DNA of 64,000 bases from Paragordius varius (GCA_964247055.1 OZ176054.1:4092001-4156000), one strand, 5' to 3'. Shown: positions 1 to 49,000, numbered from the stretch's first letter. Notes: a model not told the origin generated them from the letters alone. A program made the numbers and translations.

Positions 1-5
1 TATAC

Positions 6-6600: not shown

Positions 6601-9600
6601 TTTTGAAAAAAAATATTTGTTTCTATTTGAGGTCATTGGTGATATCAATAAGCCTTTTTATAATTTTTTAAAATTTGGCTGGTAGAAAGAAAACGCAAAA
6701 ACATAAAATATCATTTTTGCACTTTTTATCATAAAGAAAATATTTTTTTGCAAATTAGTTGTTAAAAAGCCAGGTCAACCTTATTTAGTCCCTTTTCAAA
6801 CTTTGGATGTTTTAGCCCCCAATATTTTAAATTATGTTGAAAATACTTGGAGAATCCAGGTATTAATTTTCTAATATTTTAATCAACTACGTTTCTATCT
6901 TATATTTTAGTTGATATAATCATCCCAGAAAATGATGTTGATTGTAATTTTCTGGATTATTTACATTTCTTAGTGGTTTTTTGGTAATTCATGATATTCC
7001 TTTATCTAAGTTATGATCACCATGACCGCACACAGTCGTATATCAATATTAGAATCATCAAAATTACCTGTATTAATATCAATAAGAATTCTATTTTCAA
7101 ACAATGCTTCCAACATTAATTTGTGATCTATATTATGATAATACATTTATATATAAATAAATTTATCTATTAAAAATTATTCCCTTATTGTTCATAGCTT
7201 TTGAATATCTTATAGAGGGTGATTAAAAATATCGGTTGAGTATATTTTGTGTGATTTAATTAGTAATAATCTTTTAAACCTCAAAAATTGATTAAAATAT
7301 AGTTTTGCATCTATACTGCGATGCTTTATGTGAATATAGATTATTTTTATGGAGGGTATTTATAATTAGATATAAAACCGAAAAACATTGACTTTTACCT
7401 GACTTTATTATTGTATGTCAAAAATATAAAAAAAATTAATAATTAAAAATGAAAACCCTAAAAAACAAATTGTAAATACGAAAATTTTCTTAAACTAATA
7501 CATTTTTACCTGTATTTATTAATATATCAAAAATATTTGAATAATATTTAACAATGCAATACCTAAAAAATAATAAAAAAATTATCTCGCCCAAATATTT
7601 TCTGTTTTAATTATAACAAAAATATTTTAAAATTATTATTAAAATTAACAATCAATACAGAAAAAACAAAAATTCTTAAATCTGAGTGTTTTTACCTGTC
7701 TTATTATAGTATGTCAAAAAAAATTATTTATAATTAACAAAATTAAAAAAAAGAAAAAAATTAAATTTGTCTAAATTTATTAAAAACCGCAATTTTACCT
7801 GTATTTATTAAAATGTCAAAAATATGTAGTAAATAATTACAATAGATAATGTTAAATAAAAAAACAAAAAAATTAAACTCTATTAAAAACCGCAATTTTT
7901 ACCCGTATTTATTAAAATGTCCAAAATATGTAGTAATTAATTACAATTAACAATGTCAAATAAAAAAACAAAAAAAAATTAAATTTGACTAAATTTATAA
8001 AAACCGCAATTTTTACTTGATTAAAATGTCCGCAATAGTTAAAAATTATTAATAATCAACAATGCAAAACATAAAAAACAAAAAATCTAAAATTTACTGA
8101 AATTTTCACAAATAATTATTTACCTGTGTTTTTAATTAGTAATGACAACTATTTAAATTAATAATACCAATTTTGATTAATACAGGTATTTATCATGTTG
8201 AAAAATATTTTAAATTTAATTAGGTATAATTAACATAAATAATCCTAAAATTCCTATTTTACTATTTATTAATTTATTAAAGATAAAAACCCACAAAATT
8301 CCGCATCTAAATACGTAACAACAATATTTCAAATGTTAACATAAATTGCTATAATATTCTCAAAATTTAACATTACAAAATATCCATCAAATTAAAGCCT
8401 ATGTTAATTCTCACGTCATTTCTCTTTCTACGTGTACTACGAAATAATTTTGTGGATCAGTATTTTACGCATTAGATAAACCATTTATGTTATTTGACTG
8501 GCAATAAAATTACTTAACATACATTAAAATGCATACTGTATATGAGAAATGGTAATTTTTTAGACTCTTTATAAAACGGCCGCAGTTACGAATATATTTT
8601 TAATCGGTTAAACCGAACCCCAATCAAAAGCGAAGAAAATCAAAAAATATTAAAAAAATATACCATAACCCATCAAAGTTTGTTCATTAATATCACAACC
8701 AAATACATAGGCTTTATAGGTCGCAGCACTAATCAGATTACTGGCTATAATTATAAAATATATTTTAATTAATTTACAGTTTTTTTTATAAAAACGTCAA
8801 AATGATCATTATACAGAGAGTATAATATGGCAAACACTAATTGTTTAATATTAGTGTTTGGTATATGAACCAAATATTACAAGATATTTTTACCTTATTA
8901 ATAGATATAATGGCTAATAGATGTAACATTAAGGCTAAATCGAACGTTATGCATTACAATTATAAATATGCGTTGAAACATGATATATTATCTTAAAATA
9001 CCGTAGCTTACGTAAAAAAGCGTAAGAACAACAAGTTTATAGTAGCAAAAATGCATCGGATAAATGATGGTCACAGTTTATGCTAATTTAAAAATTACCA
9101 GTCCCGACAAAGGGGTCAAATACCAAATCGTTTGGCTTAATTTGAGCAATATTCGCTAATAAAAAAGCTAGTTTCGGATTCATAGTGGTATTCCCAATAT
9201 AAGTTCGATTCGGCAAATTATATTTGGGTAATTGCACTCGAAAACTTTCACAAATCTAAAGTTGTCAAAGGGAAAAATACCTGTTTTCCAAAAAAGTACT
9301 TAATAGACGCTTTTTCATATACTTCGATCCAATTAAATAATAATTCTGGCGAAGAAAGATCTACCTTTCCAAACAATGGCAAAAAGCTTAGAGACTTTTA
9401 TTGATTACAAATAAAAAACCTCTATTATCAATATTTTCTCATCCTGAGATAATCTCTTATTAATCCCGAATACATCAAATTTAAATGACGCGTCCTTAAA
9501 ACAATGCTAAAATTTTAATTATATTATTAGATTACGAATTCTTGCGACTTAAGTTTCAATTTTTCAACCAAATCCCATCTTGATTCCGAACCAGCAAATA

Positions 9601-9892
9601 TCTCTAAAGCAAACCAATAATTTAAATAAGTATATACTTTATTAATACAGAACGTTCAACAATATTTCTAACCTGGGCCTCAAATGCTTCAACTATAACG
9701 TAGGAATCCTAAGAATTTGAGTAAATAGTACTTTAAATGAGGAGCAGGTTTTTATATTTTTAAATGAGAACAACGATTTTAATGCCGAAAATTCCTTGAA
9801 AAATATATAATTTATAACTAAACTGTTTTTCTAAATTCAATATTTTCGTGTGCATATACAAGTAAAAATTTTGAAATTTTTTGGTACACCAT
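3698..9892 (-). CDS. TRMT11: tRNA (guanine-10-N2)-methyltransferase TRM11 homolog, 9 exons: 9892-9824, 9794-9732, 9708-9638, 9614-9536, 9506-9420, 9394-9281, 9255-9099, 8744-8664, 4338-3698
   Basis: The spliced product contains FLLVYAHENIEFR, FLPLFGKVDL, YIGNTTMNPKLAFLLAN, VFDPFVGT, YVFGCDI, HNQKW, IVTDPPYGVRE and GYLVFWLP, collinear with recalled TRMT11. Introns measure 29, 23, 23, 29, 25, 25, 354 and 4325 nt; the third needs a TG acceptor. Confidence 0.93.
4670..8538. mobile_element. Foldback-type non-autonomous DNA element: ~3.87-kb imperfect palindrome in TRMT11 intron 8
   Basis: Ends read TA|CAGTATGCATTTTAATG...CATTAAAATGCATACTG|TA (TA duplication and CAGT termini, Tc1/mariner-like). 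The arms are reverse complements up to ~6520/6670. Internal ~100-bp tandem subrepeats occur at ~5150-5760 and are mirrored at ~7440-8100. No ORF. Confidence 0.85.
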
Positions 9893-9927
9893 ATGATTCA
9901 AAAAATTGTAAAATTTTGCCGCTAAAA
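9893..9927. promoter_or_regulatory. 35-bp spacer between the divergent start codons of TRMT11 and STAG (putative bidirectional promoter or overlapping 5' UTRs)
   Basis: TRMT11 ATG at 9892-9890 (-) and STAG ATG at 9928-9930 (+). The spacer contains TTTGCCGC, which fits the E2F consensus TTTSSCGC. Confidence 0.55.
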
Positions 9928-12900
9928 ATGGATACTCATCAAACCAGGTACAAGAAAAAACAAGCTATGGAAGGGGAGGAACTTGATAATGGGTATAAAT
10001 AAAATTTAACTTTATAGGGACTCTACTAAAATTAAAAAGAAACTTAAAGAAGTATTTAGTTAACGTAATTATATAAAGGAAAAAACAAAATCTATAAACA
10101 AGCAGGGTCCAGGCCGACCTCGAAAAAATGTAATAACCAACCAATCATCCCTGATTGATATAATTATTAATGGAAGAGCATCTTACCAAGTTTTTATATA
10201 AATAATTTTTAAGGGTGTCGTTGATGAATGGATTGAGGAATATAAAAAGGATAAAATTGCCGCAATTCGCATCCTTATGCAACTTTTTATAGATGCATCT
10301 GGTTGCAAGGGAAAAATAACACCTGAAATACAAAATACTATGGAACATTCCGAAATTATAAGGAAAATGACGGAGCAATTTGATGAGGTTTAAATGTTCA
10401 TTGTTATTTTTATCCATATATTAACACTTTATTATTCTATTTTAAATTTATATTAAAAAAGGATATACTATAATATAATTTTCCCCGGGAAAAATATAGA
10501 AGCCCTTAAACTGACCGATTCTGGATAAACTTTTTAAAATATTGCTTGTAACAATTTTTGCAGATTTAAAAAAATATTTATCATCACGGAGTTGGAAATG
10601 AAGACACTTTTATTGACATTTCATTAACTATTCATGTTTTGCAGACGATTATAAAATTTAATTATCATATATTTTTCTGCTTTAGATAAACCTTATATTT
10701 TTCTCAATTTTTTAATTTCTAGAATCCGAAATTCGGATATTTCAAACTCATTAATACAAACAGCTGATTAGAATCAATAAATATTTGTAATTTTCCGCTT
10801 TTTATTTGAAATCTTTCTATTAATTATTAGCATTTTTAACCATAAAATACATTTATTTCTGTTGTCGATTTCAAAAAAATCTAAAGGAAAAATAGCGGCA
10901 ACGTTTGCAATAATTTTTTAGAATTTTCCATTTTTTATAAAAATCTAGACTATATGGCGAAACGGCTAGGGAACATATTTTTATTTCGGCTCAATATTTT
11001 AAAAAATATTTAAGATATTTGAATATCGTTCGGTACAAAACTACTTGAAAAGTAATGAAGTGTAAAGTAAATCGGAAAATACAGGTGACTGCTCACAGAT
11101 TTTTAGTTTTTTCCTTTATGTGCACCTTGACTCCAAAATGTATTTCAAAAACATTAAAATTAAAAATATTATAAATTTGGCATAATACAGCAAAAAATCA
11201 AATTATACGGACAAAACATAAAAATATAAAGACAATTTTTTCGATACCATTTTTTTACTTTGCATTTTAAAAAAATGAGTTTTATTTAAAAAGTCGTCTT
11301 TTAGGAAAAAATATTTGCCTATATATTTTTTACGTTTTGTCTTTAAACTTTGGTTTTTGTTAATTTATTTTAGGACAACGCTGATTACCCCTTGGTAGCT
11401 GGTGGGATACATAAAAGATTTCGAACAAATTTTGCCGATTTCATTCAAACGCTCATTAAACAGTGTCAATTTAGCATAATTTTTGATCCTTATATAATTG
11501 ATAACATTTTGCACTTTTTGATTGGATTGGCGGATTCCCAGGTCCGTGCATTTAGGCACACTTCCACGTTTGCAGGTTTATAAAAAAATTTTATGTTAAT
11601 CAATCGATCAATTCAAATACCGCTTAAAAAGTAGTGATGAATTCTTTGGATAATTATTGTTTAACATTAAATTAATATAATGGTATAAAATAATAAAATA
11701 TGTAGTTACCTTCGTTGTTTTGTTTCCATAGTTTTACATTATTTTATCCTTTTTGTTATTAAGATATTATTTTACAACTATTTATTTATGGACGTAATTA
11801 ATGGTTACTCAAGGAAATAACATACCTATATAAGGAACAATAATAATTATTTATTTAATTCATTAAGCAATCAATAATTTTGTAATACACTCTCCGGCAA
11901 AAATGGGAATTATAAATCATATTCAGTGCCGAAATGTTAAATACGGTTAAAACTTTAGAAAAAAGGTTTTATTTTCCTGCTAGTAGCCGAACAAAAAATC
12001 GTCCATTAGATTATAACAATATAGATAAACGCCTCATTAAATTTAATTTGTTAGTATGCAACTAATCGCAAATATCGAATAAAGATTATACTGATTCTAG
12101 AAACTACAAAAATTATCTCCAAAAAATCCCATGATAGTGGCAAAAGCAAAAGACTTGCTATCATGTGGAAGATTATTTTTATTTTATTATATAGTTTACC
12201 CAATATATCGCATTCAAAAATGATTTACCTTTTATAAAAAAATAATTTTTTGATTTGTCCCAAAGCTGAAGTAGCGTATAATTCTTACAAAATATCCAAT
12301 ATATTTCATATATACCATTTCCATACAATTCGAGGCAGAAAAATATCTAGTTTTTAATTTAAAGAGTTTTATGCCCAAAAGCCCGAACAATAGCCAAAAT
12401 GGCGCCAAAAAATTTGATCAGCATTTCCGGGTAAAAAAATTCTTTAAAACCAAAAACTGAAATAAACTTCAACTTCCTAGCTATCTTTTATTAAAAAGTT
12501 TTCGTGTTCAATATTAAACAGTGAGAGATCTTGGGTTAACTGTTTAAACCATGAGAGTTTAGGGTGCAATTAGGGCCCGGTATGTTAATCCAATTATCGG
12601 AAATTATGCGTTAAATATGTCCGTAATACCATAAGGTGTTGCGTTGAATGAAGAGAGATATGGGTGTTTCTTTGAAGGCATTATTAAGATTGTTGTTGCA
12701 AATTTAAGCATGTGATTTTCAGCTATAGTAATCCTATTTAAGTTTACTCTAAGGCCCATTTCTGTAGCGCATGTCATATCAGGTTTTATCCCCATTTTGT
12801 AAATTTTTATCATATGTTTCGGTTTAATATTTTTATTTGTAAAAATATGTTTTAGTTAGTTGATTAGATTTAGCCCATTTTTGTCGGATTCTATGACAAA

Positions 12901-15900
12901 TGGCATCCCTTAAAGAACCATCAGATGATATATAATTGCCTAGATATGCAAAATGTTACAATATATAGGTCTCATTAAAATTAAATGAACGATTATTAAC
13001 TATTGTCAGTGGTATCGATAAAGCACATGGTGTACAGAAACTTATTTAATTGATTCGACTTTGGAATTTATTCCAATTCTTGCATTTAGTGCAACAAAGT
13101 GACTTTAGTTTTACCTTTGTGGCGCATACTGTTAAGAAAACTTGATGGGTCTGTGATCATCGCCTGTAATTAGGATATATTTTGGTTTTGTTTGTATTGA
13201 TTTTAAGACCGTGGTATGGTAATTGATTTAACCATATTAAATATTTGTTTTTTAGTAGTAAAATCATTTCTTTGGTAATTATGAGATCATCTGCGTATAG
13301 AATTGCACCAATCCTTTTCTAATCTTTTTTGTGCAGTCTAGTATAATATAGAAGAAGAGGACTTCAAAGTGAACCCGGATGTAGCCCGGTAATAAATATT
13401 AAAATATTCTGAATTTCCAGTTTTCGTAAGAACGTAGCTGATTGAGTTATTGTGGTTTAACATCATCAATTCAATAGTATATTCGACTACAATATTTTAA
13501 CGCAGTGATTATATTATTAGTGTTTTAGATACCGAGTCGTGAGCCTTTTCTAGGTTGGCAATCAGGTGGTCTGGTTTAAGACCTTTTGTTCGGTATTTGC
13601 ATTGGATTATTTGGGGCTGAGTAATACGATTTTTATGTATTTTCGGAGTTTTAAGGGTCTGCCGATAAATTGGAAAAGGAAATTCTAAATTTTAAAATCT
13701 CTAAACATATCAGAAACATTACAATAATAACAAAAAAGACATACCCAAACAAGGGCAAAATTTACACGATTGTCACATATGCTAGCGAATGTTGGCCCTT
13801 AAATCAAACTAATTTGAAATAGAAAGAAAAATCCTCAACCACGTCTCCTCAATCACTACCACAATGATAAAACAAATAATCATAAAAGCATACATAGTCT
13901 CTTTCATATCACACCTGTTTCTTCTTTTCTCAGAGCAAATCGTCTCAGGTGCTGGGGCCATATTGAACGCTCAAATGGTTGGATTAACAAAACTTTTCAT
14001 CCGAACGGCAATATAAGACGAGCCAGACCATATAATGATTGGGAAAAAACAATCAACCATGACACAAACTTAACTCGATTGACCAAAGACGACTGCTTCG
14101 ATCGCAAGTTATTTTGCTCAAGAATTTGTGAGCAAGCTCATGCAGGAGAAACAACGACCTGATGATGATGAAATAAAACCAGAATTGTTTAAATTCATAT
14201 GGCAAAGATTTTTGTACAAAATCCAAACCATTTACTACCCATCATCTGACAGAGATCTTTGTTGGGGGCTCTTAAAGACATTTACAATACAAGAAATCGA
14301 AATTGTTTTAGGCTAAATATTAAACAACGTTTCGGGCCCGTGAACTAAGCTTTGTTATACTAAAGCCGATGCCCAATATTTCCATCCTTTAAACAAATTT
14401 ATATAACAAAATAATAGTCGAAATGTAAATATCCTTAGACAGGGGAAAAAGCATTATATTCTCATCTTTAAAATGGAGATATCATAAACTGTTTTTTATA
14501 TAGAGCCCTAACTTGAGCATTAAAAATATTTGCTTGAAAAGTGGGATAACTTAGCTCATCTCAATAAAAATATTTATAATATATATTGGAGGTTTTATAG
14601 AAATTAATACGCTACTCCTGCTTGGGGCATATCGAAAAATTCTTTTTATAAATTATGGTAAAATCATTTTTTAACACGAAATTTGGGATGCACTAGTAGA
14701 TATATAATAGTTAAACCAAAGATTAAAATCTTTTACCGCATAATAACAAGTTTTTAATTGAAATTTGACCACAAGTGCGATTTTTTAGCTGTGAATCTTG
14801 TAACTCTTTTTTGGACGCTCTGAAAAGAATGTAAAATCTTTATCGATAATATTTTGCGTTTAGAATTCCTTATAATATATTTTAACGAATAAATTTTAGT
14901 TTTTGATTTTATTCGTACCTAATGTGCGATGAAAATTCGATTTTTTGATTTTCGCTAATAGCATAAAAATTGAAATAACTTAAAATCAAGTTTAACCGTT
15001 TTTACCATGATGATATTCATTATCTTTAACCTTTTGTTTCGAATGATATACCATTTCCCAGTCTAAATAAACGTTTTCCCAGTCAATCGAAACATTTTCC
15101 CAATCAATCGAAACATTTTCCCGGTCAATCGAAACGTTTTCCCAGTCAATAGAAACATTTTCCCAGTCAATAAAAACATTTTCCCAACCAATAAAAACGT
15201 TTTCCCAGTCAATAAAAACGGTTTTATTTTTGATGATAAATATCAAAACAAGACATAAAAATAACTTTCAGCCATTATCAGCATAATATTAGGATATTAT
15301 TTTTTTATAAAAACTTAATTATTGAATGACCATTTTTTAAGTATATTCCAGTGCACAATCATTAATGACTTATTCTATTAAAGAATGATATTTTTGGAAT
15401 TTGAGATGTTTTTAAGATAATATTTTTTATTTTATTAATGGTTCGCATTAATATTTGCCGAACGCCTTAAAACAGTTTTTAAACATGCCAAGTTTTTTTT
15501 ATAACAATACTGTCGGAAAAAATATCTAAACCAAAATTTTTTCGATAAAAATGTTTTTGATTTAAAAAATTTAATAAAAATATATTTGACTAAAACAGGG
15601 GTTAACCACGCGGGCCGCATTACTCAAAAAGCACGGCGTTCCATTCGATATATTTCATAAATAATTTTTTGGTTAGACATAATAAGACTGTAAAATACAA
15701 AAATATAACATTAAGATTTTGTGGGCATTTTGCATATAGATTTCCAAATTTTTCGTGGGCCGCACAAAGATACTCGGCAGGCCGCCTTAGTCCCCCGATG
15801 AACCAAATAAAAGATATTATAAAATTATGGTAAAATTTATGTTTAAGATCCAAAATGAAGTGTTAAATGACTTTTGAGATAAAAATGGCATATTATTTTT

Positions 15901-16995
15901 ATTTTTAATATTTCATCCGAAACTATAGATTTTTTAAGTTAGCCACAAATAATGCGAACCATTAATAAAATAAAAAATATTATCTTAAAAATCCAAATTC
16001 CAAAAATATAATTCTTTAAAATAATAAGTCATTAATGATTGTGCACTGGAATATATTTTGAAAATTGTCATTCAATAATTGTGTTTTTATAAAAAATAAT
16101 ATCTTAATATTACGCTGATAATGGTTAAAACTTATTTTTATATATTGTTTTGATATTTATCATCAAAAATAAAACCGTTTTTATTGACTGGGAAAACGTT
16201 TTTATAGATTGGGAAAATGTTTTTATTGACTGGGAAAATGTTTCGATTGACTGGGAAAACGTTTCGATTGACTGGAAAAATGTATTGATTGACTGGGAAA
16301 ACGTTTCGATTGACTGGGAAAACGTTTCGATTGATTGGGAAAATGTTTCGATTGACTGGGAACACGTTTATTTAGACTGGGAAATGGTATATATGATTTA
16401 TAAACACTTATTTTTTGATCCGCAATTTTGTCGCACCAATATATTGTGTAAATGTATATCCTAGCCCTTAAAATAATGACTGCGCTGGTGGATGTAATTA
16501 TAAATATCAGTACTAACCTGGATTATTCTGTGCGTCAATATGAGACGGAAAAGGGAAAATGTACGACTAAGCGGCCATCAGAACGCCTAGAAATGTTGGC
16601 ACAAAAGAAACAAGAAATTGAAGAAAACAATAATGATGTGTGCACACAATTGACATACATTTTCCGTAGCATATTTGTCCATCGTTATAGGTTGGTAGTA
16701 AATGTTATAAAAATTATTTTTTATAGTAAATATTACTTGGATCTTTTGGTTTGAGGTAGGTTCGTAATAATTGCATTGATCGTGACCCTTATAAAAATTG
16801 TTGCAGTTCTTATACTAAATTTTATCATTATCTTTCGAATATATGGTGTATAAGTTAAGGATAGATTTTTATTTACTGTATGACCTTGTAAAAAACTTTT
16901 TGCAGCGTATATGTTTTTGGAGAACATTGACTTTTTTCAAAAATATCCAGTTAAAGTTTAATACATACGCTTATATGTGTGATATATAAAATTAT

Positions 16996-17028
<33 letters not shown>

Positions 17029-20000
17029 AATTTGTATTTGAAATTGTAACGTTCATAAGTTTGAACAAGGCAAAATGTCATTTTATCATCACGCTTTTTA
17101 TAAATACTGTTAAAGCTATTATTTATCAGTTACAAACATGTTTAATCTAAAATTAATACTGTGGGTGGTCAGAATGGATTATATATATTGGCCCGTCAAA
17201 AACCTGCCTAATATAGCTATTATTAATTTTTAAAAATTGTTACTAACGAATGATTTAATCAAATCCTGTGTAATTTATTTCATAAAATATAACTTTAAAT
17301 GTGTAGAGATATTGTGCCAGATATACGGGCACTCTGTATGTTTGAACTTGGCATATGGATGAAACGATATCCTAAATTATTTTTGGATGATAGCTATCTC
17401 AAATACATTGGTTGGACGCTTTATGATAAGGTTTAAATCATTATTTTGATAAATTTTTAATTACTATAAAAGGTTGGAGAGGTACGTCTTAAATGTTTAA
17501 TGGCCCTGCAACCATTGTATTCTTCGGAGGAGTCTGCCACTAAACTTGAACTATTTACCAATAAATTTAAGGTACTTTTATTATTATACCAAAACTTTTA
17601 TAAATTTTTATCCAAGTTTTTATTTGCAAAATGTTACATGAAAAATTTACCTCACATATACTATTATAAATTGAGACAATTTTAGATATAATGTTTGAAA
17701 AAACCCGAGAATTTAAGCATTAATTTGCAATCTAAAAAAAATGTTTTATAATATTGGTTTAAAAACTATTATATAAAAGCGACCATTTTGAATTTAGTAA
17801 ATATTGTTTGCATATATTAATAGGACCGTATAGTGGCTATGACCTTAGACAAAGATTATGATGTTGCCGTACAAGCTGTCAAACTCATAAACTACATTTT
17901 GAAATATCACAAAGATATACTAACCGATCGGGATTGTGAACATGTCTATGAACTCGTTTATTCAATACATAAACAGGTTAATTTCATATTAATTTTTATT
18001 AATTAAATGTTTATCGTTAAATCTACAAAATCTTTTTACAAAAATTAAATACTAAAGTCAATACGTAAACAGTAAAAAATTAATATTTTCTTAAAAAACA
18101 ATTTAAATCCCTGACTTCTTTCTAAATATCTAAATTGGGTTATATAAAAAATAAACTAGAAAAATATTGTCTTTATAAAATCAATTAATTTTACATTTTT
18201 TTTCCCTAAAAAACTTTAGAAATATGGCATAAGATTTGTTTTATCTTTTTATTGATCTATTTACAATAAATACTTTGATCGTTATAATAATACTCGACTT
18301 ATATTAAAGGTTTCATAGTTAATCAAAAAAAATATGATTTAATTCCAATATTTATTAATAATATTCTATACTAAATCATCAAATTCAAATTGATTTTTTT
18401 AAAATGCCATTTAATTTACATAACCTTAATTAGTTAAAATTAATTTTTATGTTTTGTTTTTGGATAATTTTAATTAGGTCGCTCAAGCTGCTGGTGAGTT
18501 TTTGAAAGAAAGATTATTTACATTGGATGAGGATGCACTTAACAAGGTTGTAAAGACTAAACGGGGTAAAAAACGATTACCCAATACTCCACTAATCAGG
18601 GATCTAGTCCAATTTTTCATTGAAAGTGAGGTAATTTTAAACAAGTTTTTACGTTAATCGTTTGCATGTAAAATTAGTATGTTTAAATTTGGAACTATGA
18701 TGAAAAACAATATTTATATTAATAAAAAAAATTTAACCCTAATTTTATTGAATTTAATTGGAGGAGATTTATGAATGTTTGCAAGATTTAAATACTTTCC
18801 TAGTCTTCTGGTTTTAATCATGTTTTATACATACCTTTTTCAATTTTTATGTTATGTATATGTATTTTTGACAGCTTCATGAACATGCGGCCTACCTAGT
18901 TGATAGTTTGATCGAAACGAACGAAATGATGAAAGATTGGGAATGTATGACTGACCTTCTCTTGGAAGAACCTGGCCGTGGCGAAGAAGGTATATCCCCT
19001 AAAAGGATAAAAAATAAATTTAAAATTTATTTGGCTTAAATATTACGAAATTTAAATAATTAAAGTTAATTTAGGGAAAACATGTGAGAGAGTATTTAAA
19101 AAACGCACTCTTATTCTTTTATTTTTACTCTAACATAATTATTATTGTTGTTAATAAGTATATATATACTTAGTTATACAAATTCTTTTGATTATATAAT
19201 ATTAAATATGATTAATAGCCTTAGATAATCTTCAAGAAACGAGTTTAATTGAAATTATGACGTGTTGTATTAAACAAGCCTCGACAGGTGATTCACCAGT
19301 AGCACGCTCTGTTACACGCAAAACCCATGTATATAATTATTACAAAAGTTGAAGTATCCAAGATTTTATCTAATAAAGGAAAGATTATTAATTTGATTCA
19401 TCGTTTTTTCCGCATAATATAATTACGATTATGAAAACTTTCTTATGTGCGATGTAAAATGTAATAATAATATAATCAAAGCGGCAAATATTATTAATAT
19501 GACATTAAATTTTGTTTTCTTATTAATCTAATTATAAAATATTCAACTACGTTTGTATTACTAATTTACATCATTACTCAACCTTAACACATATCAAAAA
19601 ATTCAAGGTTTAAAAATTATTGTTTTCCATATTTAAATTTTTACTGTATAAACTCATTTTATTTCTATTATTTTATCTTGTGTTTATTTTTAATTTGAGG
19701 TAGGCATCTACAAAGGAAAATAAACAGCTAATGGAGGAAAGATCTAAAATCACCCAACATTTTATGGTTAATTTGCCTGTTCTCATTGCAAAAGTATTAT
19801 AAAAACCATCAGACATTATATTTCATTATTAATAATAAAATTATATCCTAAATATATATTATTTTTTTAGTATATTGCAGACCCAGAAAAAATTGGCAAT
19901 CTCTTATTAATCCCTCAGTATTTTGATTTGGATCTCTACGTATTAAATAGATGTGAAAAGGTAACTTGATGTTAACCCAATATAATTAATATAACATTTA

Positions 20001-26000: not shown

Positions 26001-26124
26001 TGTAAAGAGGACTGGCAACCCCTTCATAATTATCGGAATGGCCTTTCTCAACATCTCGATAACACGTCCATTGTATTAAGCAATATCTCCCAAGCATTGG
26101 AAGATGCTACAATTAAAACCAAAG
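9928..26124 (+). CDS. STAG: Cohesin subunit SA/stromalin (Scc3 family); exons 9928-9992, 10018-10051, 10079-10189, 10214-10387, 11374-11575, 16465-16690, 17307-17430, 17473-17571, 17824-17976, 18478-18630, 18875-18989, 19219-19328, 19704-19793, 19871-19960, 20430-20633, 20803-20898, 21176-21291, 21526-21802, 22767-22871, 23185-23376, 24136-24198, 24357-24625, 25022-25147, 25955-26124
   Basis: Phase-consistent GT-AG exons encode family motifs [85 protein letters not shown] and [27 protein letters not shown]. The paralog (STAG1/2/3) cannot be assigned. Confidence 0.93.
13040..13690 (-). mobile_element. Decayed RTE-like reverse transcriptase fragment
   Basis: The minus strand reads GLHPGSL*SPLLLYIILD and LYADDLII (YADD at ~13286-13297), with stops and frameshifts. 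Confidence 0.75.
13745..14118 (+). mobile_element. Decayed 3' fragment of the same RTE family as 47240-50864
   Basis: Near-collinear with the reverse complement of ~47280-47720 (e.g. gctagcgaatgttggcccttaaa, ctcagagcaaatcgtctcag, ccgaacggca, gatcgcaag), with deletions. Confidence 0.85.
15046..16392. mobile_element. Inverted-repeat (foldback/MITE-like) element with subterminal 21-bp tandem repeats, in STAG intron 5
   Basis: Arms ~15046-15458 and ~15946-16392 are reverse complements around a ~490-bp spacer. The unit GACTGGGAAAACGTTTCGATT occurs 8 times in the left arm and 10 times in the right. Termini are TA|CCATTTCCCAGTC...GACTGGGAAATGG|TA. Confidence 0.8.
15596..15797. mobile_element. hAT-like MITE remnant inside the spacer of the inverted-repeat element
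   Basis: Begins CAGGGGTTAACCACGCGGGCCGCA, has an internal GGGCCGCA motif and ends with a degenerate GTCCCCCG. Confidence 0.45.
23566..23957. mobile_element. hAT-superfamily MITE in a STAG intron
   Basis: TIRs CAGTGGCGTACCGAG / CTCGGTACGCCCCTG, internal GGCGCCCGGGGCA motifs, and a decayed 8-bp TSD (agtttacc / atttgacc, 6/8 matches). Confidence 0.8.
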
Positions 26125-26403
26125 GTATAATATCTGTTTTATAGTGAAAAATTATAAAAAATAATGACAAAAGTTAAATTAAATACTATAAAAATCGTTT
26201 TCCGTATTTAATCTGTTTAAAAATATAATATATTTGAATTACTAAATTGTTGTTTTAAGTATTACAAGGAAATAAATATACACATAATAATTGTCTACCA
26301 ACAAAATTTATTTTAATTTTATATAAAAACTTTAGTCTTTTACCCATTACAAATTTTATTTACTTTTAATTTTTATTTTGACATTTAACATTGTATGCAC
26401 TAG

Positions 26404-28242: not shown

Positions 28243-28282
<40 letters not shown>

Positions 28283-31530: not shown

Positions 31531-31567
<37 letters not shown>

Positions 31568-35400: not shown

Positions 35401-38400
35401 TTAGTCGTCCTATGGTCATTGAACAAGAGCATGTTACAATTTGGACAGGAATATATCATACGAAAGCGGATCCAAAAACTAGAAATTGGTTAAATTTATT
35501 AGAATCCGAATCCGAAAATGATATGGATGTAAGCAATTTATTGTACTCTTTGCTCTTTAGTCAACATTTGTTTTTTTAAATAAATTCGAATTTCTGCTTT
35601 AAATTATTTTTCTTTTAACTGCTAGTCCGATTTAAAATTTATATTATTATGGAGAATCAGTAATTTTAATTGGGAAAATTTTGTATTTAAGTCTAAATTT
35701 AAAATATTGTTTCAAGCATTCAATTCAATTTATCCTGGCATTTTAATTATATATATCTTTAGACTATCCGATTAATGACATCAGTGGCTCAGCCAGTGTT
35801 TGATCGAAAAAATGCAACGTTGGGTGAAGGAAATTTGCTTGGTGTAATGGGGACTGATGTTCCTATTGAAGAAATTATCAAACTTACCCCACAATATAAG
35901 GTTATGACTGAGTTTTTAGTAGCCAGAATCTATTAAACTTTTTTTGTTTAACCCTTTTTTCTTTCTTTTAATGCATAAATACTTTTTTGTGCCATAAATA
36001 AAATAAATCTCATTCATTTATATTTTTTCTGCTTAAATTATATGGTATTTAAAATTAATTAGTTGAAAAACTATTAAAAAAATAACTACTGAAATCGTTC
36101 ATAGTTTTATACTTGAACCATTTAAAATAGAAGTTTTTTTCATAATATATATATATCAATATAATTGCTTATTTTTTTTGTTGATTGAGTGCGTGACGCA
36201 AACGTTTTTATGCTGAAAAAGTAGAAGATATTTGAATTTAAAATATTAATTTTTTGTAAAATTTTTTGTGTCCCGTGTTCTTCACAAATGAAAATGGTAA
36301 AAATGGAAACTTTTGGCGTTCGATATTAAACTTTTTATAAAAGAATTATTTATATTTTAAAATTTTTCGCATATATAGTTAGGTGCTAATGGTTATCCAT
36401 TTGCCATCACAAACAATGGTTATATATTGTTTCATCCGGACCTTAGACCCATGTATGGGAAACAGACTAAACCTAATTATAACAGTATTGATTTGGCTGA
36501 AGTTGAATTCTCCGATCAAGAAAATCCGACGGGAAAAAATTATGTAATGAAATTGCGTAAAGATATGATTGATCAAAAATCTGGTAATTGTACCATGGTA
36601 GTTAAAATGGCTTACGATTCTATGGTATATTTTGCATTAATATTTATTTTCTTGAAATCGTTTTTAATTATAATAATGTAATGTTTTTGAAATCTAAATT
36701 ATGCTACAATTTATTTGTTCACTTTTAATGCAAAAAAATAAATAATATAAATTAATGTTGCCATGTTTTGGGGTATTTGACTACGTACAAAGTATTATTT
36801 TATGTTATAAACAATTTTTACCTTGCTTATTGTTTATTAACCATTTTTTACGATATATTTGTTTTATATCTCACATTTATACTGTATAAAATTTATATAT
36901 TATTGTGCTAGCGACGAGTTTATGTACGAAGGAATTATTATTATTACATAACCTTGCAAAGGACACCATTTAGTTTGGGCATATCCATCCCCGAAAATGG
37001 TTTTTTACTTGTATTTTTATATTAAAGGCTTGTATACCGTTAAAAGTCGATTAAATATTGCCGATTTCGATTTGCGTGATTTATCTGGTACGGGGTGGAA
37101 AGTTATACCAGATTGGGTTTATTGTCGACTACCAAACGAAGAGAATAAATTGAATGATCCTGAACGAATGATTAAATATATTAAGTTAGCAATTGCTGCA
37201 CAAAAAACAGCTAAAGAAAAGTTCCAAGATGAATTCCGATTGTTTACTGAAAATTGTATGTTACACACCTCTATTTTATCATTTTTTATGTTTCCTCATG
37301 CAATATAATGCAATATATATATATATATATATATATATGTAAATGAAAATAGGCGATGCAGAGTTAATATCTAGTTTTGCATTTGATGCCAAAACAACTT
37401 CGACCGTAGTATCAGATTGGGAAAGTCAAAAAGATTATGCAATCCTTAATGGTGTAGTATCAATATTTTTGGGAACTCGCTCTGGGTTAACCCGTTTTCT
37501 CCACATCAATGCTAAAAGTTTACATATTTATATACTTATTCAATATTAGATATATTTTTATGGCAAATTAAAAACTACCTTTTTCGAATAGATTCTAACA
37601 GCACATACCCGCCTGATAATTACATAGACAAGCATATAAAAACTTTAGAAGAATTATATTACAAACGAGCCGATGATTCTGGATCAGGCATTCTCGTTAT
37701 ATCTGTGGATCACAATAATTACCCCGATAACACCTTTGCAAAAGTTTATTTGCCAGAGGATATTAAAGGTTTTATTCAACAATCACATAAATAATTTCTC
37801 TAAAGTTCCCAATTAATATCCATTTTTACTGATTTTACATCATTTTTTTATAATCACCAAATTTCTTTTTTAGATTTAGATGAAGTTACATCTATTAATG
37901 TTACCGGATTCATATCCTCAGATAGTGCAACGCCACTGAATCCTATGGAAGTATTTATTTAAAATATGAAAATTTTTTAATATGGCCAATGGGCGTTTTA
38001 TATTTATGAATGCTCGATAATTTACGACAAATTACAATATATATTGATTATATCTTTTCTAACTAAACAGGATATGATAATTGGCCAAGAAGACACTAAG
38101 TTTTCTAATGCATCAAGCTATGAGAATATGTTTATAACTACCAGTTCAGCAATAGTTATAACTAATCCGAATAACGAAGCAAAAGCAACTACGGCTGTCA
38201 TTGGGGCCCGAATCAAATTGGAGAGTCTTGCGAATTTGTTTTACAAAACTTCTACCGTCGATTGCTTTCAAAATGGCACTATATGTTATTTATTGGATGA
38301 ACATGCTTATGTTATACTAACTTCCAAAATGGATCCCAGACATGTTGGAAAATTTTTTGGTCAAATTGATGGCCGTATTATGTTAACTTTGGCCGATCAT

Positions 38401-39445
38401 GTTTATAAGAGGTATTCAGTGAATTTTAATTTGATTTTTTAGGATAGAATTATTCGATTTCCAAGCCATGTGTGAATCCAAAGTCTCCCTATTTAGCTCT
38501 GCATTTCTCAACAGCAAAGTTATAGCTTTTATTATGCAACGTTTGTTGTTTGCAATAAAATTGCTTTTCGCATTTATACAAGAATCTCCATTTAAGCCTT
38601 TTGCCGTTATATCTACTTACTTTGTGAAGACTGAGGCCAAGCTTTTTTCGAATGTTACATCTTCCTTCTTTAGTCGTCTATATAAATCCTCTATCAAAAG
38701 TGATGATGTGGAAAATCCTTATGACATTAAAACATTCAAAGCTCCACATCATTGCCAAAAACGTTTTCATCTTTTTAAATTAAATCGGGATTTGCTTGCA
38801 AATGAGGTATTTTTAGCATTATAATTTATCGCTAATAGCAATTGTTTTTTCATTGATAATACACTTTCTTTCATATAATAGGGTCCGGTTTCCTTAATTG
38901 CTAATTGTGGAGGCACTGCAGCATTTTCCGATGCATCTGGGCTGTATGAAAAACTAAGATTCTGTGGTAAACCATTTACTGTTAGCCTTGTTTCGCACAC
39001 TAACCTAGTATTGGTGGTTGCGCGAAAGGCACATTCTGGTCTCTTTGATTCCGATGACAATAACAAGGATATGGAACAAACGGCGGCATCAGATGAATAC
39101 TCGAAAATCAAGTACATTTGTTCGCTGTGTGACGACTTAAATTTCAATTATCAGCCTCGGAGTGTTTCTCTTACACATAGAGAAGTGTCCGATGAAAATG
39201 ATTCCCCCGAATCATCTTACGTCCCTCCAACATTGTTTGAAGATAATGCCCAAGTAACTCCTCAACCAGTTACACCAAAAAATAAGTGCTTTCGCTTAAA
39301 AAAAGATGTGTATCGCTATAGACCAACAACTTGTTACTCCTTCAATAAATTTGAGAATTCGACCATATGTGGGTCAGCTTATATCATTAAAAACCATGTA
39401 ACATTCATGTTATTTTCCTTTGTATGTTGTTTATTAATGTTATAA
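32447..39445 (+). CDS. CACNA2D: Voltage-gated calcium channel auxiliary subunit alpha2/delta (alpha2delta-3/4-like); ~22 exons, 11 introns of 21-31 nt
   Basis: Signal peptide [12 protein letters not shown]; motifs [46 protein letters not shown]; VWA domain DGSGS...[11 protein letters not shown]...[11 protein letters not shown]; Cache domains ([58 protein letters not shown]); C-terminal CGSA followed by a hydrophobic tail (GPI signal) ending at TAA 39445. Confidence 0.93.
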
Positions 39446-46095: not shown

Positions 46096-49000
46096 ATGAC
46101 GGCCAAGCAGCAAATGAAAGCCATGTTGGATGAGTTGATGGGTACCCAAAGAAACGGTTTTTATTTGTTTAACAATGCAGGGGAATCTAACACGGAAATA
46201 AAATTTGACGATAGAAGTGTTTGTAAAAATTTTCTATTAAATTGTTGCCCTCACGATATTTTATCTGGAACGGTATTTGTTATCTTATATCTATAGCGGA
46301 TGGATGTGGGTGGATGTCCGAAAATCCATAATTATGCATTAAGAGCAGATTATGAAATGGCATCAAAGGATAAAGATTACTTTTATGATCTTGAAGTTTT
46401 TAAAAATATTATCATAGGCTTTAGAAAACTTACAATACTTTATAAGTGACTGTGATCATAAAACAGAGATTGCTAAACGCAAATTAGCTGAAACTCAAGA
46501 AGAGTTGGATGAAGATAATCAGGAGAAAGTTTGACTTTTATTTGATTTTGAGGCTAATCAAATTAACATATTAAGTGAAAAAATTGGTATCAAATTAGCC
46601 GAAGCAGAAACTTTGGGAACCAAAGGCGAAGTTGAAGCCAGTATGGCACTTTTAAAAGATGTTGAAGATTTGAAACGACAAAAATTAGACGCTGAAGTTC
46701 ATTTTTTAAAAATTATATATAGTTAATTCTTAAAAATTCACTTCCACTATCCAGTTATCAGCAACACAAATTACGTGTTTGCGAAGTTTGTTCTTCATAT
46801 TTGGGTGTGCATGATAATGAAAAAAGGTAATACATTGTTTTTTTATTGAGATCACGTTTAAATATTTTTAGATCATTATAGAGTTTTTTATGCTTATATT
46901 TTATTTTATTAGGTTTATTGGATATTACGAAATTTTTTCCAAAAATAGAGTCTAACATGGCATAAAATTCCAAGCGTATGTAATAAAATTATGTTTTTAT
47001 AACATACCATATTTTCTAGATTTTACACAAAGTTAAATTTACAGATATAATAATTTATTTTTAAAAGATATTACGGGGACTATATTTTAGTATAAACCTC
47101 AAAAACAATAATTTTTATTTTCAGAAGCGGAATAAATTTGCATATATATTAAAATTGTGCTTCAATTTTGATATCTAAAAACTACTGTTTTTACAAATAT
47201 AGTCATAGCCAATAATGAGATATATAATAACATATCTAATCAATCAATCAAGTCGTTGTTTGTCCAGCATGTGCTAGCTTCCAAATTCTTGAGCGAAATA
47301 GCTTGCGATCGAGACAATCGTCTTTGTTCAGTTGAGTTAAGTGTAAGTCATTGCTGAGTGTTTTTTCCCAATCATGGTATGGTCTGCCTCGTTTTAAATT
47401 GCCGTTCGGATGAAAGGATCTAATTTTGTTAATCCAACTATTTGAGCGTTCAATGTGACCCCAGTATCTGAGACGATTTGCTCTGAGAAAAGAAGACATA
47501 GGTGCGATATGAAACAGATTATGTATGCTTTTATTATTATTTGTTTTATCATTGTGATACTGATTGGTGAGACATGAGTTGAGGATTTTTCTTTCTATGT
47601 CACATAATTTATTTTCATTAGTTTGGTTTAAGGGCCAACATTCGCTAGCATAGGTGAGGGCAGGGCGAATGGCAATCGTGTAGATTTTGCCCTTGTTTGG
47701 GTTTGAAATGTGTTTGTGTTTCATTATATACTTGAGTTGATGAAATTTGGCCCAAGCCTGATGTGTCCGTGTTGTTATGGCGTTTTTAATATTCATATCA
47801 GCTGCTATTGTGTCACCCAAGTAATTGTACTTGTTTACTATTTCGATGTTTGTAGTTGGAAGGTAGGTGGTTTGTGTGGGATTATTTGGGTTTATATCTG
47901 GTGTTGCACAAGCTTTACATATAAAATTTTCAATTCCCAATAAACTTCCTTTAATTTGTGAGCACTTTTTATGGACCCACAGCTGGCATTTAGTGCATTT
48001 GATGGAATTAAGTTTCACTTCAGAGTGACAAATGGAGCAAGGGAATTTTATTACAGGTACCGGTGAGCCTGTTATTAAAGCCTTTGTTTTATCTGTGTTA
48101 ATTTTGAGGCCAAATTTTTCTAAAGTAGATTTCCAGAGGTTATATTTATTGATAATGTCTGTTTCGCTGGTGGCTGTTAGTATTATGTCGTCAGCGTACA
48201 TCATCTCAAAAGGTAAACCTGTTTTTATATTATCAGTTATTACATCCATAATGATGATAAATAGTAATGGACTGAGGATGGAGCCCTGGTGTAGTCCGAC
48301 AGTTACTGGAAATTGATTGGTATCACCCACGGGAGTTCTCACGCAACTAGTGGTGTTCTCATATAGTAAGTTTATTATTCTTATTATCCATTCCGGAATT
48401 TCTTTTTTTCGTAACGCAAATGTGATCATGGACCGCGGGATGCAGTCGAATGCACGGCTTAAATCAATAAAGATGTGATATAGGGTTTTGTTTTTGCATC
48501 TGTAGTTCTCTTGTAGCCTTCTAAGAATGAATATGGCGTCAGAGGTGCTGATCCCCTGTTGGAAACCGAATTGGTTTTCGTCAATCGAGCAAAGCTGACG
48601 TATTTTCTTTTCTATAATTATTTCGAATAATTTGGTTGCGTGTTCAAGTAATTTTAATGGTCTGTAGGAGGCGCAGTTGAGCATGTCGCCTTTGTTTTTA
48701 TATATTGGAATTATGACACTTTGGTTCCAGTCGTTCGGGATTTTTTCCTCCATTATAATCAGATTAAATAGCTCTGTGAAATAGGTAATTGCTTCAGGAA
48801 TATTTTTGTACATTTCAGTTTTAATTTCCGTTGGACCAGATGCCTTATTGATTTTACATTTTTGCATGGCTAAGCTCACATCTTCTGCAGTAATAATTGG
48901 GGGTGGCCCAATAACTGGAGGTAAGTTTGGGATCTCGACATTTGAATGCTGGAAATTCAGTGTATTTTGCATGTATTGTGTCCATACATTTTGAATGCTA

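What the first reader, a model, noticed from the sequence alone, without database searches (positions are those of the whole stretch)
8664..46826. At least 25 spliceosomal introns of only 21-31 nt in conserved animal genes, coexisting with kb-scale introns
Seen: removing GT-AG segments restores conserved reading frames. Lengths are 29, 23, 23, 29, 25, 25 in TRMT11; 25, 27, 24 in STAG; 23, 21, 26, 22, 29, 25, 26, 29, 24, 28, 31 in alpha2delta; and 24, 24, 22, 24, 26 in LUC7. The same genes have introns up to 4.9 kb. Known: introns this short are far below the usual animal minimum and are reported mainly from dicyemids, ciliates and nucleomorphs. Inference: one spliceosome handles both extremes, implying unusual intron-definition machinery and pointing to a reduced, probably parasitic, animal lineage.
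Basis: partly seen in the sequence, partly recalled or inferred. Interest (0 to 1): 0.8.

Follow-up and report, generated by a model that had tools for sequence, protein, structure and literature searches.

The report
Tiny introns in hairworm-like genes
Four ordinary animal genes in this AT-rich, repeat-rich genome, whose nearest known relative is a horsehair worm, are interrupted by 25 introns of only 21-32 bases beside introns of thousands of bases; this would be a third animal group with introns this short, but I could not see the cutting in RNA.

Summary
I found one more, of 32 nt. The third "23-nt" TRMT11 intron does not exist as a GT-AG segment.

Evidence, by gene:
- LUC7: the exons hit consecutive stretches of the Pfam LUC7 profile.
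- alpha2delta: 19 of 22 introns, including 11 of 12 tiny ones, lie at the same coding nucleotide as annotated introns of the Gordionus (horsehair worm) orthologue. That protein is by far the nearest relative (59% identity; all others 42% or less).
- Where this genome has 21-29 nt, Gordionus has 40-45 nt or kilobases.

Kilobase introns in the same genes are real (1087, 4152, 4325 and 4889 nt). Tiny introns cluster at the 5' end of every gene. U1, U2 and U6 snRNAs are canonical, and U11 and U6atac are also present.

No RNA proof was obtained: the three putative RNA runs laid nothing.

Introns under 30 nt are published only for dicyemids and myxobolid myxozoans (MBE 2026). I found no report for hairworms.

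This scan had already noted the same phenomenon in about ten other stretches of this genome.

The parts
3698..9892 (-). TRMT11 gene: 9 exons; introns 29, 23, one unresolved, 29, 25, 25, 354, 4325 nt
   Evidence: Reading. A fungal TRMT11 (P0001) aligns collinearly to exons 5-9 by tblastn. Pfam UPF0020 hits exon 7 and exon 9.
9795..9823 (-). TRMT11 intron 1, 29 nt, GT-AG, phase 0
   Evidence: Support is frame logic only: retaining it gives a stop.
9709..9731 (-). TRMT11 intron 2, 23 nt, GT-AG, phase 0
   Evidence: Support is frame logic only: its length is not a multiple of 3.
9602..9653 (-). TRMT11 exon 3/4 junction, unresolved. Options: GT-AG of 47 nt (9602-9648), GT-AG of 50 nt (9604-9653), or a non-canonical GT..TG of 23 nt (9615-9637)
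   Evidence: Enumeration of all GT and AG sites against the two reading frames. No 23-nt GT-AG segment exists here.
9507..9535 (-). TRMT11 intron 4, 29 nt, GT-AG, phase 0
9395..9419 (-). TRMT11 intron 5, 25 nt, GT-AG, phase 0
   Evidence: P0001 residues 8-36 and 38-58 align on either side of it.
9256..9280 (-). TRMT11 intron 6, 25 nt, GT-AG, phase 0
   Evidence: P0001 residues 38-58 and 82-136 align on either side of it.
4339..8663 (-). TRMT11 intron 8, 4325 nt
   Evidence: P0001 is collinear across exon 8 to exon 9. Acceptor site seen.
9928..26141 (+). STAG (cohesin SA) gene; 3' end not mapped. First introns are 25, 27, 24, 986, 4889 nt; a 42-nt intron lies at 17431-17472
   Evidence: Exons 4, 5 and 6 match human SA-2 residues 98-154, 155-223 and 221-307.
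9993..10017 (+). STAG intron 1, 25 nt, GT-AG, phase 2
   Evidence: It is the only chain that links the single ATG (9928) to the conserved exons. No homology support.
10052..10078 (+). STAG intron 2, 27 nt, GT-AG, phase 0, in-frame stop if retained
   Evidence: Frame logic only.
10190..10213 (+). STAG intron 3, 24 nt, GT-AG, phase 0, in-frame stop if retained
   Evidence: The downstream exon starts at SA-2 residue 97/98. The upstream exon is too short to score.
11576..16464 (+). STAG intron 5, 4889 nt, holding tandem and inverted repeat arrays
   Evidence: SA-2 residues run continuously across it, 223 to 224.
32447..39445 (+). Calcium-channel alpha2delta gene: 23 exons, 22 GT-AG introns, 1269 codons
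   Evidence: Exon-by-exon alignment to Gordionus XP_065319522.1.
32515..32537 (+). alpha2delta intron 1, 23 nt
   Evidence: Lies at the same coding nucleotide (110) as a 41-nt Gordionus intron.
32620..32640 (+). alpha2delta intron 2, 21 nt
   Evidence: Same position (192) as a 45-nt Gordionus intron.
32752..32777 (+). alpha2delta intron 3, 26 nt
   Evidence: Same position (303) as a 43-nt Gordionus intron.
32838..32859 (+). alpha2delta intron 4, 22 nt
   Evidence: Same position (363) as a 43-nt Gordionus intron.
33023..33051 (+). alpha2delta intron 5, 29 nt
   Evidence: Same position (523) as a 40-nt Gordionus intron. Pfam VWA_N positions 19-80 and 83-124 lie on either side.
33184..33208 (+). 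alpha2delta intron 6, 25 nt
   Evidence: Same position (655) as a 5979-nt Gordionus intron.
33270..34356 (+). alpha2delta intron 7, 1087 nt
   Evidence: Same position (716) as an 881-nt Gordionus intron.
34972..34997 (+). alpha2delta intron 9, 26 nt
   Evidence: Same position (1032) as a 704-nt Gordionus intron.
35109..35137 (+). alpha2delta intron 10, 29 nt
   Evidence: Same position (1143) as a 65-nt Gordionus intron.
35361..35384 (+). alpha2delta intron 12, 24 nt
   Evidence: Same position (1272) as a 76-nt Gordionus intron.
37000..37027 (+). alpha2delta intron 16, 28 nt; Gordionus has no intron here
   Evidence: Homology runs straight across it (implied position 1888 on both sides), and 28 is not a multiple of 3.
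   Evidence: At or within 6 nt of a 295-nt Gordionus intron at 2287.
38412..38442 (+). alpha2delta intron 21, 31 nt
   Evidence: Same position (2906) as a 2518-nt Gordionus intron.
46096..53087 (+). LUC7-like gene: 8 exons; introns 24, 24, 22, 24, 26, 4152, 1760 nt
   Evidence: Seven exon pieces hit the Pfam LUC7 profile in order without overlap. Sequence read.
46157..46180 (+). LUC7 intron 1, 24 nt, phase 1. The only tiny intron that would read through in frame without a stop
   Evidence: Profile positions 2-16 and 23-50 flank it. Present in X1 DNA contigs.
46273..46296 (+). LUC7 intron 2, 24 nt
   Evidence: Profile positions 23-50 and 51-82 flank it.
46396..46417 (+). LUC7 intron 3, 22 nt
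   Evidence: Profile positions 51-82 and 86-120 flank it. Two X1 haplotype contigs span it, with 2 differences inside it.
46529..46552 (+). LUC7 intron 4, 24 nt
   Evidence: Profile positions 86-120 and 123-167 flank it.
46697..46722 (+). LUC7 intron 5, 26 nt
   Evidence: Profile positions 123-167 and 178-204 flank it.
46827..50978 (+). LUC7 intron 6, 4152 nt, holding an antisense retrotransposon reading frame of 1040 codons (47251-50370)
   Evidence: Profile positions 178-204 and 205-238 flank it. Open reading frame listed.

Best explanation
These are genuine U2-type (GT-AG) spliceosomal introns. In this lineage they have been whittled down to a narrow minimal size of about 21-32 nt (mean 25.7). 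The genome is a nematomorph-like one and is not otherwise compact.

Shown:
- The segments sit exactly where the horsehair worm Gordionus has annotated introns.
- They are compositionally non-coding.
- All but one would break the reading frame if kept.
- They cluster at the 5' end of each gene, while later introns in the same genes grow to kilobases through transposon insertion.

Inferred:
- They are recognised by intron definition. The standard U1, U2 and U6 snRNAs act on very reduced signals: GT plus A or T at the 5' end, (T/A)AG at the 3' end, and an A-rich stretch instead of a clear branch motif.
- Selection holds them at the shortest length this spliceosome can handle.
- The ancestral short class was about 40-45 nt, as in Gordionus, and shrank by roughly 20 nt in this lineage.
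For: Position and homology:
- Nucleotide-exact positional match: 19 of 22 alpha2delta introns, and 11 of 12 tiny ones, coincide with introns of Gordionus XP_065319522.1. Exon sizes are identical (82, 111, 60, 132, 61, 90, 111, 50, 165 nt) and so are phases.
- LUC7 exons tile the Pfam profile consecutively.
- STAG exons tile human SA-2 residues 98 to 307.
- TRMT11 exons 5-9 are collinear with a fungal TRMT11.

Properties of the segments:
- 25 of 25 have GT-AG ends. 18 of 25 are not multiples of 3. 6 of the 7 multiples of 3 carry an in-frame stop.
- GC content is 17-19% in tiny introns against 35-36% in exons.
- X1 short-read contigs contain the segments. Of the differences between the two haplotypes, all 5 in exons are synonymous in my frame and 2 lie in the 22-nt intron.

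Machinery:
- U1, U2 and U6 are canonical.

5' clustering:
- The first 6 of 22 (alpha2delta), 5 of 7 (LUC7), 6 of 8 (TRMT11) and 3 (STAG) introns are the short ones. Chance values are 0.012, 0.048 and 0.036.
- In Gordionus the five shortest introns are the first five of 25 (chance 2e-5).
Against: - No RNA evidence. Three runs labelled with the same species and guessed to be RNA held none of alpha2delta's words. They laid nothing on LUC7 even at 90% likeness.
- Frame-joining by GT-AG alone is at chance level in this DNA.
- STAG introns 1-2 and TRMT11 introns 1-2 rest on frame logic only.
- One TRMT11 junction has no clean solution.
- A YTRAY-type branch motif occurs in only 11 of 25 tiny introns.
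- The Gordionus introns used for comparison are gene-model annotations, not transcripts I examined.
Confidence: 0.85

Rival explanations
1. The segments are not removed. They are small insertions in decaying or mis-modelled genes, or are translated.
For: No RNA was seen. LUC7 intron 1 is 24 nt and reads through without a stop.
Against: 24 of 25 segments would shift the frame or introduce a stop. Four single-copy essential genes would all be dead. Exon polymorphisms are all synonymous. The positions coincide with Gordionus introns.
Confidence: 0.03
2. The segments are assembly or sequencing artefacts, such as spurious insertions.
For: None found.
Against: X1 short-read contigs carry LUC7 introns 1 and 3 in two haplotypes, and no indel is reported at any tiny intron. 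All 25 segments have GT-AG ends. X1 may be the assembly's own sample, so it is independent in technology only.
Confidence: 0.02
3. The segments are removed at the DNA level, like ciliate internal eliminated sequences, rather than from RNA.
For: The size (about 26 nt) and AT-richness resemble Paramecium eliminated sequences (my own knowledge). Related worms such as some nematodes eliminate DNA.
Against: The ends are GT-AG, not TA-TA. They are positionally homologous to ordinary 40-5979-nt introns in Gordionus. They are present in the DNA contigs at full depth.
Confidence: 0.02
4. The segments are excised by a non-spliceosomal RNA route, such as the IRE1/XBP1-type or tRNA-endonuclease-type.
For: The 26-nt XBP1 intron is of similar size (my own knowledge).
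Against: GT-AG ends are universal, positions are shared with normal introns, and many occur per gene. I did not fold the segments to look for paired stem-loops.
Confidence: 0.01
5. The tiny introns are spliced by a dedicated variant machinery, for example the U1 variants with C9 changed to U, and not by the same particles that handle long introns.
For: Two of the four best U1 genes read ACTTACTTG instead of ACTTACCTG and still score 114-122 bits. The exon base before the intron is A in 12 of 25 tiny introns against 1 of 14 longer ones (p = 0.013). A U at position 9 would pair with that A.
Against: The sample is small. A at position -1 may simply follow AT-rich codons. U1 variants are common in animals without any such role. 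Expression was not tested.
Confidence: 0.07

Closest known systems
Ultra-short introns of dicyemids (Dicyema japonicum; cited in PMC13644364)
   Same: An animal and a parasite. GT-AG introns in the low-to-mid 20s of nt. 5' signal reduced to about GTA/GTW. No polypyrimidine tract. Weak A-rich branch region.
   Different: In dicyemids, short introns go with a small, compact genome. Here they share genes with 1-5 kb transposon-laden introns and concentrate at gene 5' ends. The lineage is unrelated: Ecdysozoa, next to Gordionus.
Myxobolid myxozoan introns (Henneguya, Thelohanellus, Myxobolus; median 22-27 bp; PMC13644364)
   Same: Size range, reduced splice signals, canonical U2 snRNA, AT-rich genome (29% GC in Henneguya).
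   Different: Myxobolids are cnidarians, and there the short class is the genome-wide median. That paper reports short introns flanked by short neighbours, but not a 5' polarity with kilobase introns downstream.
Short-intron class of Gordionus montsenyensis (RefSeq model XP_065319522.1 on OX940785.2)
   Same: Same gene, same intron positions and phases. The same 5' polarity: the first five introns are the shortest.
   Different: The Gordionus minimum is 40-45 nt, an ordinary animal value. This genome's is 21-29 nt at the very same sites. It also lacks five or six Gordionus introns and has one 28-nt intron that Gordionus lacks.
Ciliate tiny introns (Paramecium about 25 nt, Stentor 15-16 nt; cited in PMC13644364 and PMC13685798)
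   Same: A narrow minimal-length class. Nearly all break the frame if retained.
   Different: Ciliates are protists in which essentially all introns are tiny. With only 25 cases here, a ciliate-style deficit of 3n lengths cannot be assessed (7 of 25 are 3n).

Membership tests
U2-type (major) spliceosomal introns | GT at the 5' end and AG at the 3' end | tested here: met
   25 of 25 tiny introns and 14 of 14 longer introns. For alpha2delta the ends were fixed independently by alignment to Gordionus.
U2-type (major) spliceosomal introns | Removal restores a conserved reading frame at a position shared with orthologous introns | tested here: met
   LUC7 Pfam tiling. 11 of 12 tiny alpha2delta introns lie at Gordionus intron positions.
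U2-type (major) spliceosomal introns | Absent from mature mRNA | tested here: inconclusive
   Runs X6-X8 ('RNA?') laid no contig on 45900-47100 and held none of alpha2delta's words.
U2-type (major) spliceosomal introns | Branch-point adenosine and lariat formation | not testable with these tools
   Sequence only: a YTRAY motif lies 6-16 nt from the 3' end in 11 of 25, most often at -9.
U2-type (major) spliceosomal introns | Cognate snRNAs encoded in the genome | tested here: met
   U1: 17 matches, best 124 bits. U2: 46 matches, best 178 bits. U6: 114 bits. The 5'-splice-site and branch-binding boxes are canonical.
U12-type (minor) introns | Conserved (A/G)TATCC 5' signal and TCCTTAAC branch box | tested here: not met
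   None of the 25 starts with GTATCC. The minor snRNAs U11 and U6atac do exist in the genome.
Animal ultra-short-intron genomes (dicyemid / myxobolid type, PMC13644364) | A discrete intron class under about 30 nt with reduced splice-site motifs | tested here: met
   21-32 nt, mean 25.7. The 5' signal is GT plus A (12) or T (13). The 3' signal is (T/A)AG.
Animal ultra-short-intron genomes (dicyemid / myxobolid type, PMC13644364) | Genome-wide median intron length under 30 nt | not tested
   In this window 25 of the 39 fully mapped introns are tiny. A genome-wide histogram needs annotation. Earlier notes of this scan report the class in other pieces of the genome; I did not check them.
Ciliate-type internal eliminated sequences | TA-TA boundaries and absence from somatic DNA | tested here: not met
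   The boundaries are GT-AG, and the segments are present in DNA contigs.
Nematomorpha (identity of the organism) | Nearest relative among sequenced proteins is a nematomorph, with shared gene structure | tested here: met
   The best of 1.84 billion representatives is Gordionus sp. m RMFG-2023 at 129 bits and 59% identity. The next is 49 bits. Named runners-up are a bivalve, an ostracod and amphioxus at 35-41%. 19 of 22 intron positions are shared. Placement inside the phylum is not resolved.

The most novel reading that the evidence does not exclude
Hairworms have a 5'-polar 'minimal-intron zone'. In the first 0.5-0.8 kb of each transcription unit, introns are held at the smallest length the spliceosome can take: about 42 nt in Gordionus and about 25 nt here. 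Introns further downstream are free to swell with transposons.

This points to a cap- or promoter-proximal splicing regime. U1 variants (C9 changed to U) that pair with the A|GT 5' sites typical of the tiny introns may assist it.

Probability: 0.2. Interest if true: 0.8.

Novelty: new member of a known kind. Interest (0 to 1): 0.6.

Why it matters
Introns under 30 nt were long held to be absent from animals. As of September 2026 they are published for two parasitic lineages only, both with compact genomes.

A third, independent lineage (an ecdysozoan next to horsehair worms) would be informative for four reasons:
- The tiny introns share genes with 1-5 kb introns. That separates intron minimisation from genome compaction.
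- Together with Gordionus (40-45 nt at the same sites) it forms a natural pair for asking what sets the minimum spliceable length.
- The 5' polarity is an unexplained regularity that can be tested.
- Default settings of aligners and gene finders (minimum intron about 20-40 nt) would break such genes. This bears on the low BUSCO scores and the gene-loss claims for Nematomorpha.

Tried and rejected
1. A purely statistical test was uninformative. I counted GT-AG segments of 15-80 nt that join two open frames of at least 20 codons, against six decoy dinucleotide pairs. GT-AG is not enriched, so open-frame logic alone proves nothing in this DNA.

2. RNA. My one read-laying run went to LUC7 (45900-47100) with X6, X7, X8 and X1. 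The three putative RNA runs gave nothing. No RNA holder was listed for alpha2delta.

3. A word search with the 212-aa last exon of TRMT11 found only a fungal protein and a metagenomic fragment. The length window excludes full-length orthologues.

4. Solved structures:
- STAG exon 3 (37 aa) and TRMT11 exon 7 gave no match.
- Pfam found nothing in the six short N-terminal TRMT11 exons or in several short alpha2delta exons.

5. Reaching the Gordionus genome for LUC7, STAG and TRMT11 failed. The flanks of the Gordionus alpha2delta locus are not syntenic. The genome search does not hold that genome. PF25904 is not in the library.

6. U12 snRNA was not found. I do not read this as absence, since U11 and U6atac are present.

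I redid it from coordinates.

Joined coding sequences were built only inside local scripts, to count stops and base composition.

9. The Current Biology hairworm genome paper is not held, so I could not check whether it mentions intron sizes.

Full report
WHAT IS THERE

The window is AT-rich (22-36% GC) and full of transposon reading frames. It holds four conserved animal genes:
- TRMT11 on the minus strand (9892 down to 3698).
- A cohesin STAG gene on the plus strand, from 9928.
- A calcium-channel alpha2delta gene (32447-39445).
- A LUC7-like splicing-factor gene (46096-53087).

I re-derived every exon from the sequence and checked splice sites and frames by script.

CHECKING THE OBSERVATION

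Alpha2delta can be read as 23 exons and 22 GT-AG introns, giving 1269 codons without an internal stop. Its intron lengths are 23, 21, 26, 22, 29, 25, 1087, 299, 26, 29, 91, 24, 234, 478, 287, 28, 97, 32, 105, 120, 31 and 75 nt. A twelfth tiny intron of 32 nt (37518-37549) was missed.

- LUC7 has 24, 24, 22, 24 and 26 nt, as claimed, followed by 4152 and 1760 nt.
- STAG begins with 25, 27 and 24 nt, as claimed, followed by 986 and 4889 nt. A 42-nt intron lies further on.
- TRMT11 has 29, 23, 29, 25 and 25 nt, then 354 and 4325 nt.

The third claimed TRMT11 "23" fails. Between 9602 and 9653 the only GT-AG segments that restore the frame are 47 or 50 nt long. The 23-nt segment that keeps the best-looking protein alignment ends in TG. 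I leave that junction unresolved.

IS IT MORE THAN CHANCE?

Frame logic alone is not enough. In this DNA, GT-AG segments of 21-31 nt that join two open frames are no commoner than segments bounded by decoy dinucleotides (175 against 176-253). Homology settles the question.
- The seven LUC7 exon pieces hit consecutive, non-overlapping stretches of the Pfam LUC7 profile: 2-16, 23-50, 51-82, 86-120, 123-167, 178-204 and 205-238.
- STAG exons 4, 5 and 6 match human SA-2 residues 98-154, 155-223 and 221-307.
- TRMT11 exons 5-9 are collinear with a fungal TRMT11.

For alpha2delta, one search of 1.84 billion protein representatives with the 113-aa exon 21 gave a single strong hit (129 bits, 59% identity). 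The next was 49 bits. The source names the hit as alpha2delta-3-like of Gordionus sp. m RMFG-2023, the Montseny horsehair worm. Named runners-up are a bivalve, an ostracod and amphioxus at 35-41%.

I fetched the Gordionus locus and mapped its protein exactly onto the DNA. I then aligned each window exon separately to the Gordionus protein.
- 19 of the 22 window introns fall on the same coding nucleotide, in the same phase, as a Gordionus intron.
- Many exon sizes are identical.
- Of the 12 tiny introns, 11 are shared. The Gordionus partners measure 41, 45, 43, 43, 40, 5979, 704, 65, 76, 295 and 2518 nt.
- The 28-nt intron (37000-37027) has no Gordionus partner, but homology runs straight across it, and 28 is not a multiple of three.
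- Two introns (105 and 120 nt) lie in a divergent stretch that I could not place.

FURTHER SUPPORT

- All 25 tiny introns are GT-AG.
- 18 of the 25 have lengths that are not multiples of three.
- Six of the seven multiples of three carry an in-frame stop. Only LUC7 intron 1 could be read through.
- Tiny introns are 17-19% GC against 35-36% for exons.
- Short-read contigs of run X1 carry the tiny segments, in two haplotypes.
- Of the listed differences between those haplotypes, all five in LUC7 exons are synonymous in my frame, and two lie inside the 22-nt intron.

The segments are therefore real DNA, and the exons are under purifying selection in the proposed frame.

WHAT WAS NOT SHOWN

Excision from RNA was not shown. 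No run is on record as RNA. Three runs carrying the same species label and guessed to be RNA held none of alpha2delta's words. They laid nothing on LUC7 at 90% likeness. They may not be the same species, or may not be RNA.

I could not test that.

WHAT ORGANISM

The assembly is 110.6 Mb in 44 contigs. Its nearest sequenced relative is a gordiid hairworm, with shared gene structure. The Gordionus genome is likewise 26.9% GC and 64% repeats (10.1101/2023.06.26.546503).

The 59% identity in a conserved domain means this is not Gordionus itself. I call it nematomorph-like and leave its placement within the phylum open.

HOW IT PROBABLY WORKS

The introns are U2-type.
- The genome encodes canonical U1 (5' end ACTTACCTG), U2 (GTAGTA box) and U6.
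- It also keeps U11 and U6atac. A minor spliceosome therefore exists, but none of the tiny introns has its signals.

The splice signals of the tiny class are minimal.
- 5' end: GT followed by A (12) or T (13).
- 3' end: (T/A)AG, with no pyrimidine tract.
- A YTRAY branch motif in only 11 of 25.

This matches what PMC13644364 describes for myxobolids and Dicyema.

The narrow length range suggests selection at the shortest spliceable length, recognised across the intron. That is inference.

Compared with longer introns in the same genes, the tiny ones more often follow an exonic A (12 of 25 against 1 of 14, p = 0.013). Two of the four best U1 genes carry a C-to-U change that would pair with that A. 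This is a lead, not a finding.

A REGULARITY WORTH NOTING

In every gene the tiny introns come first.
- alpha2delta: the first 6 of 22 (six more occur later).
- LUC7: the first 5 of 7.
- TRMT11: the first 6 of 8, counting the unresolved short one.
- STAG: the first 3.

The first longer intron starts 461-823 nt downstream of the start codon. Gordionus shows the same polarity at its own scale: its five shortest introns (40-45 nt) are the first five of 25. The polarity therefore looks ancestral, and the roughly 20-nt shrinkage looks lineage-specific.

KNOWN OR NEW

Introns under 30 nt in animals are published for dicyemids and, since September 2026, for myxobolid myxozoans. That survey of 51 metazoan genomes found no other case (PMC13644364). 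Its species list was not available to me.

Full-text searches for hairworm or Nematomorpha introns found nothing relevant. The Gordionus genome preprint never uses the word intron. The Current Biology hairworm genome paper is not held.

I therefore rate this a new member of a known kind. Two features have no counterpart in what that paper reports for the two published lineages: coexistence with kilobase introns, and 5' polarity.

This scan had already noted the same class in about ten other stretches of this genome. That neither raises nor lowers my score.

HOW THE SEARCHES WERE RUN

All database searches were made exon by exon, by reference. 

Noticed in passing
window 9890-9930: TRMT11 (minus strand, ATG at 9892-9890) and STAG (plus strand, ATG at 9928-9930) lie head to head with only 35 bp between their start codons. 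A TTTTAG acceptor-like site sits 29 nt upstream of the TRMT11 ATG. This implies near-zero or overlapping 5' UTRs, or possibly trans-splicing. Another reader noted a similar pair (COX4/NFU1) nearby.
   Followed up: no
L001-L004 (G000:C6:604678-604842, C6:606254-606419, C3:864188-864352, C6:3718553-3718717): Two forms of U1 snRNA score well. One has the canonical 5' end ACTTACCTG. The other reads ACTTACTTG (C9 changed to U), which would pair with an A before the intron. Most of the 17 U1 matches cluster within about 70 kb on contig C6.
   Followed up: partly
L009 (G000:C2:4857045-4857187), L010 (G000:C5:11395495-11395742): U6atac (66 bits) and U11 (63 bits) are present, so the minor spliceosome seems to be retained. 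Nematodes, the sister phylum, have lost it (my own knowledge). U12 itself was not picked up.
   Followed up: partly
window 37000-37027 versus L007 18598-18919: A 28-nt intron exists here where the Gordionus orthologue has one uninterrupted 322-nt exon. Conversely, Gordionus has five or six introns (at coding positions 867, 1356, 1473, 1629, 2757 and perhaps 2547) that this genome lacks. Intron gain and loss is ongoing between the two worms.
   Followed up: partly
window 47251-50370 (minus strand) inside LUC7 intron 6: An apparently intact 1040-codon retrotransposon reading frame (endonuclease and reverse transcriptase type) lies antisense in the 4152-nt intron. Another reader of this window proposed an HDV-like ribozyme at its 5' end (50806-50880). 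I did not examine it.
   Followed up: no
window 14995-15267 (minus strand) and 16129-16461 (plus strand): Two inverted copies of a tandem array lie inside the 4889-nt STAG intron. The period is about 24 nt, and it reads as '[11 protein letters not shown]...' when translated.
   Followed up: no
window 45900-47100 (run X1): Local heterozygosity is very high. Two contig haplotypes differ at 6 of 139 positions, and there are 11 differences in about 130 nt upstream of LUC7.
   Followed up: partly
window 1-1070, 54950-55963, 56400-63800: The rest of the window is a patchwork of retrotransposon reverse-transcriptase frames and Harbinger-like transposase copies on both strands. This genome is not a compacted one.
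   Followed up: no
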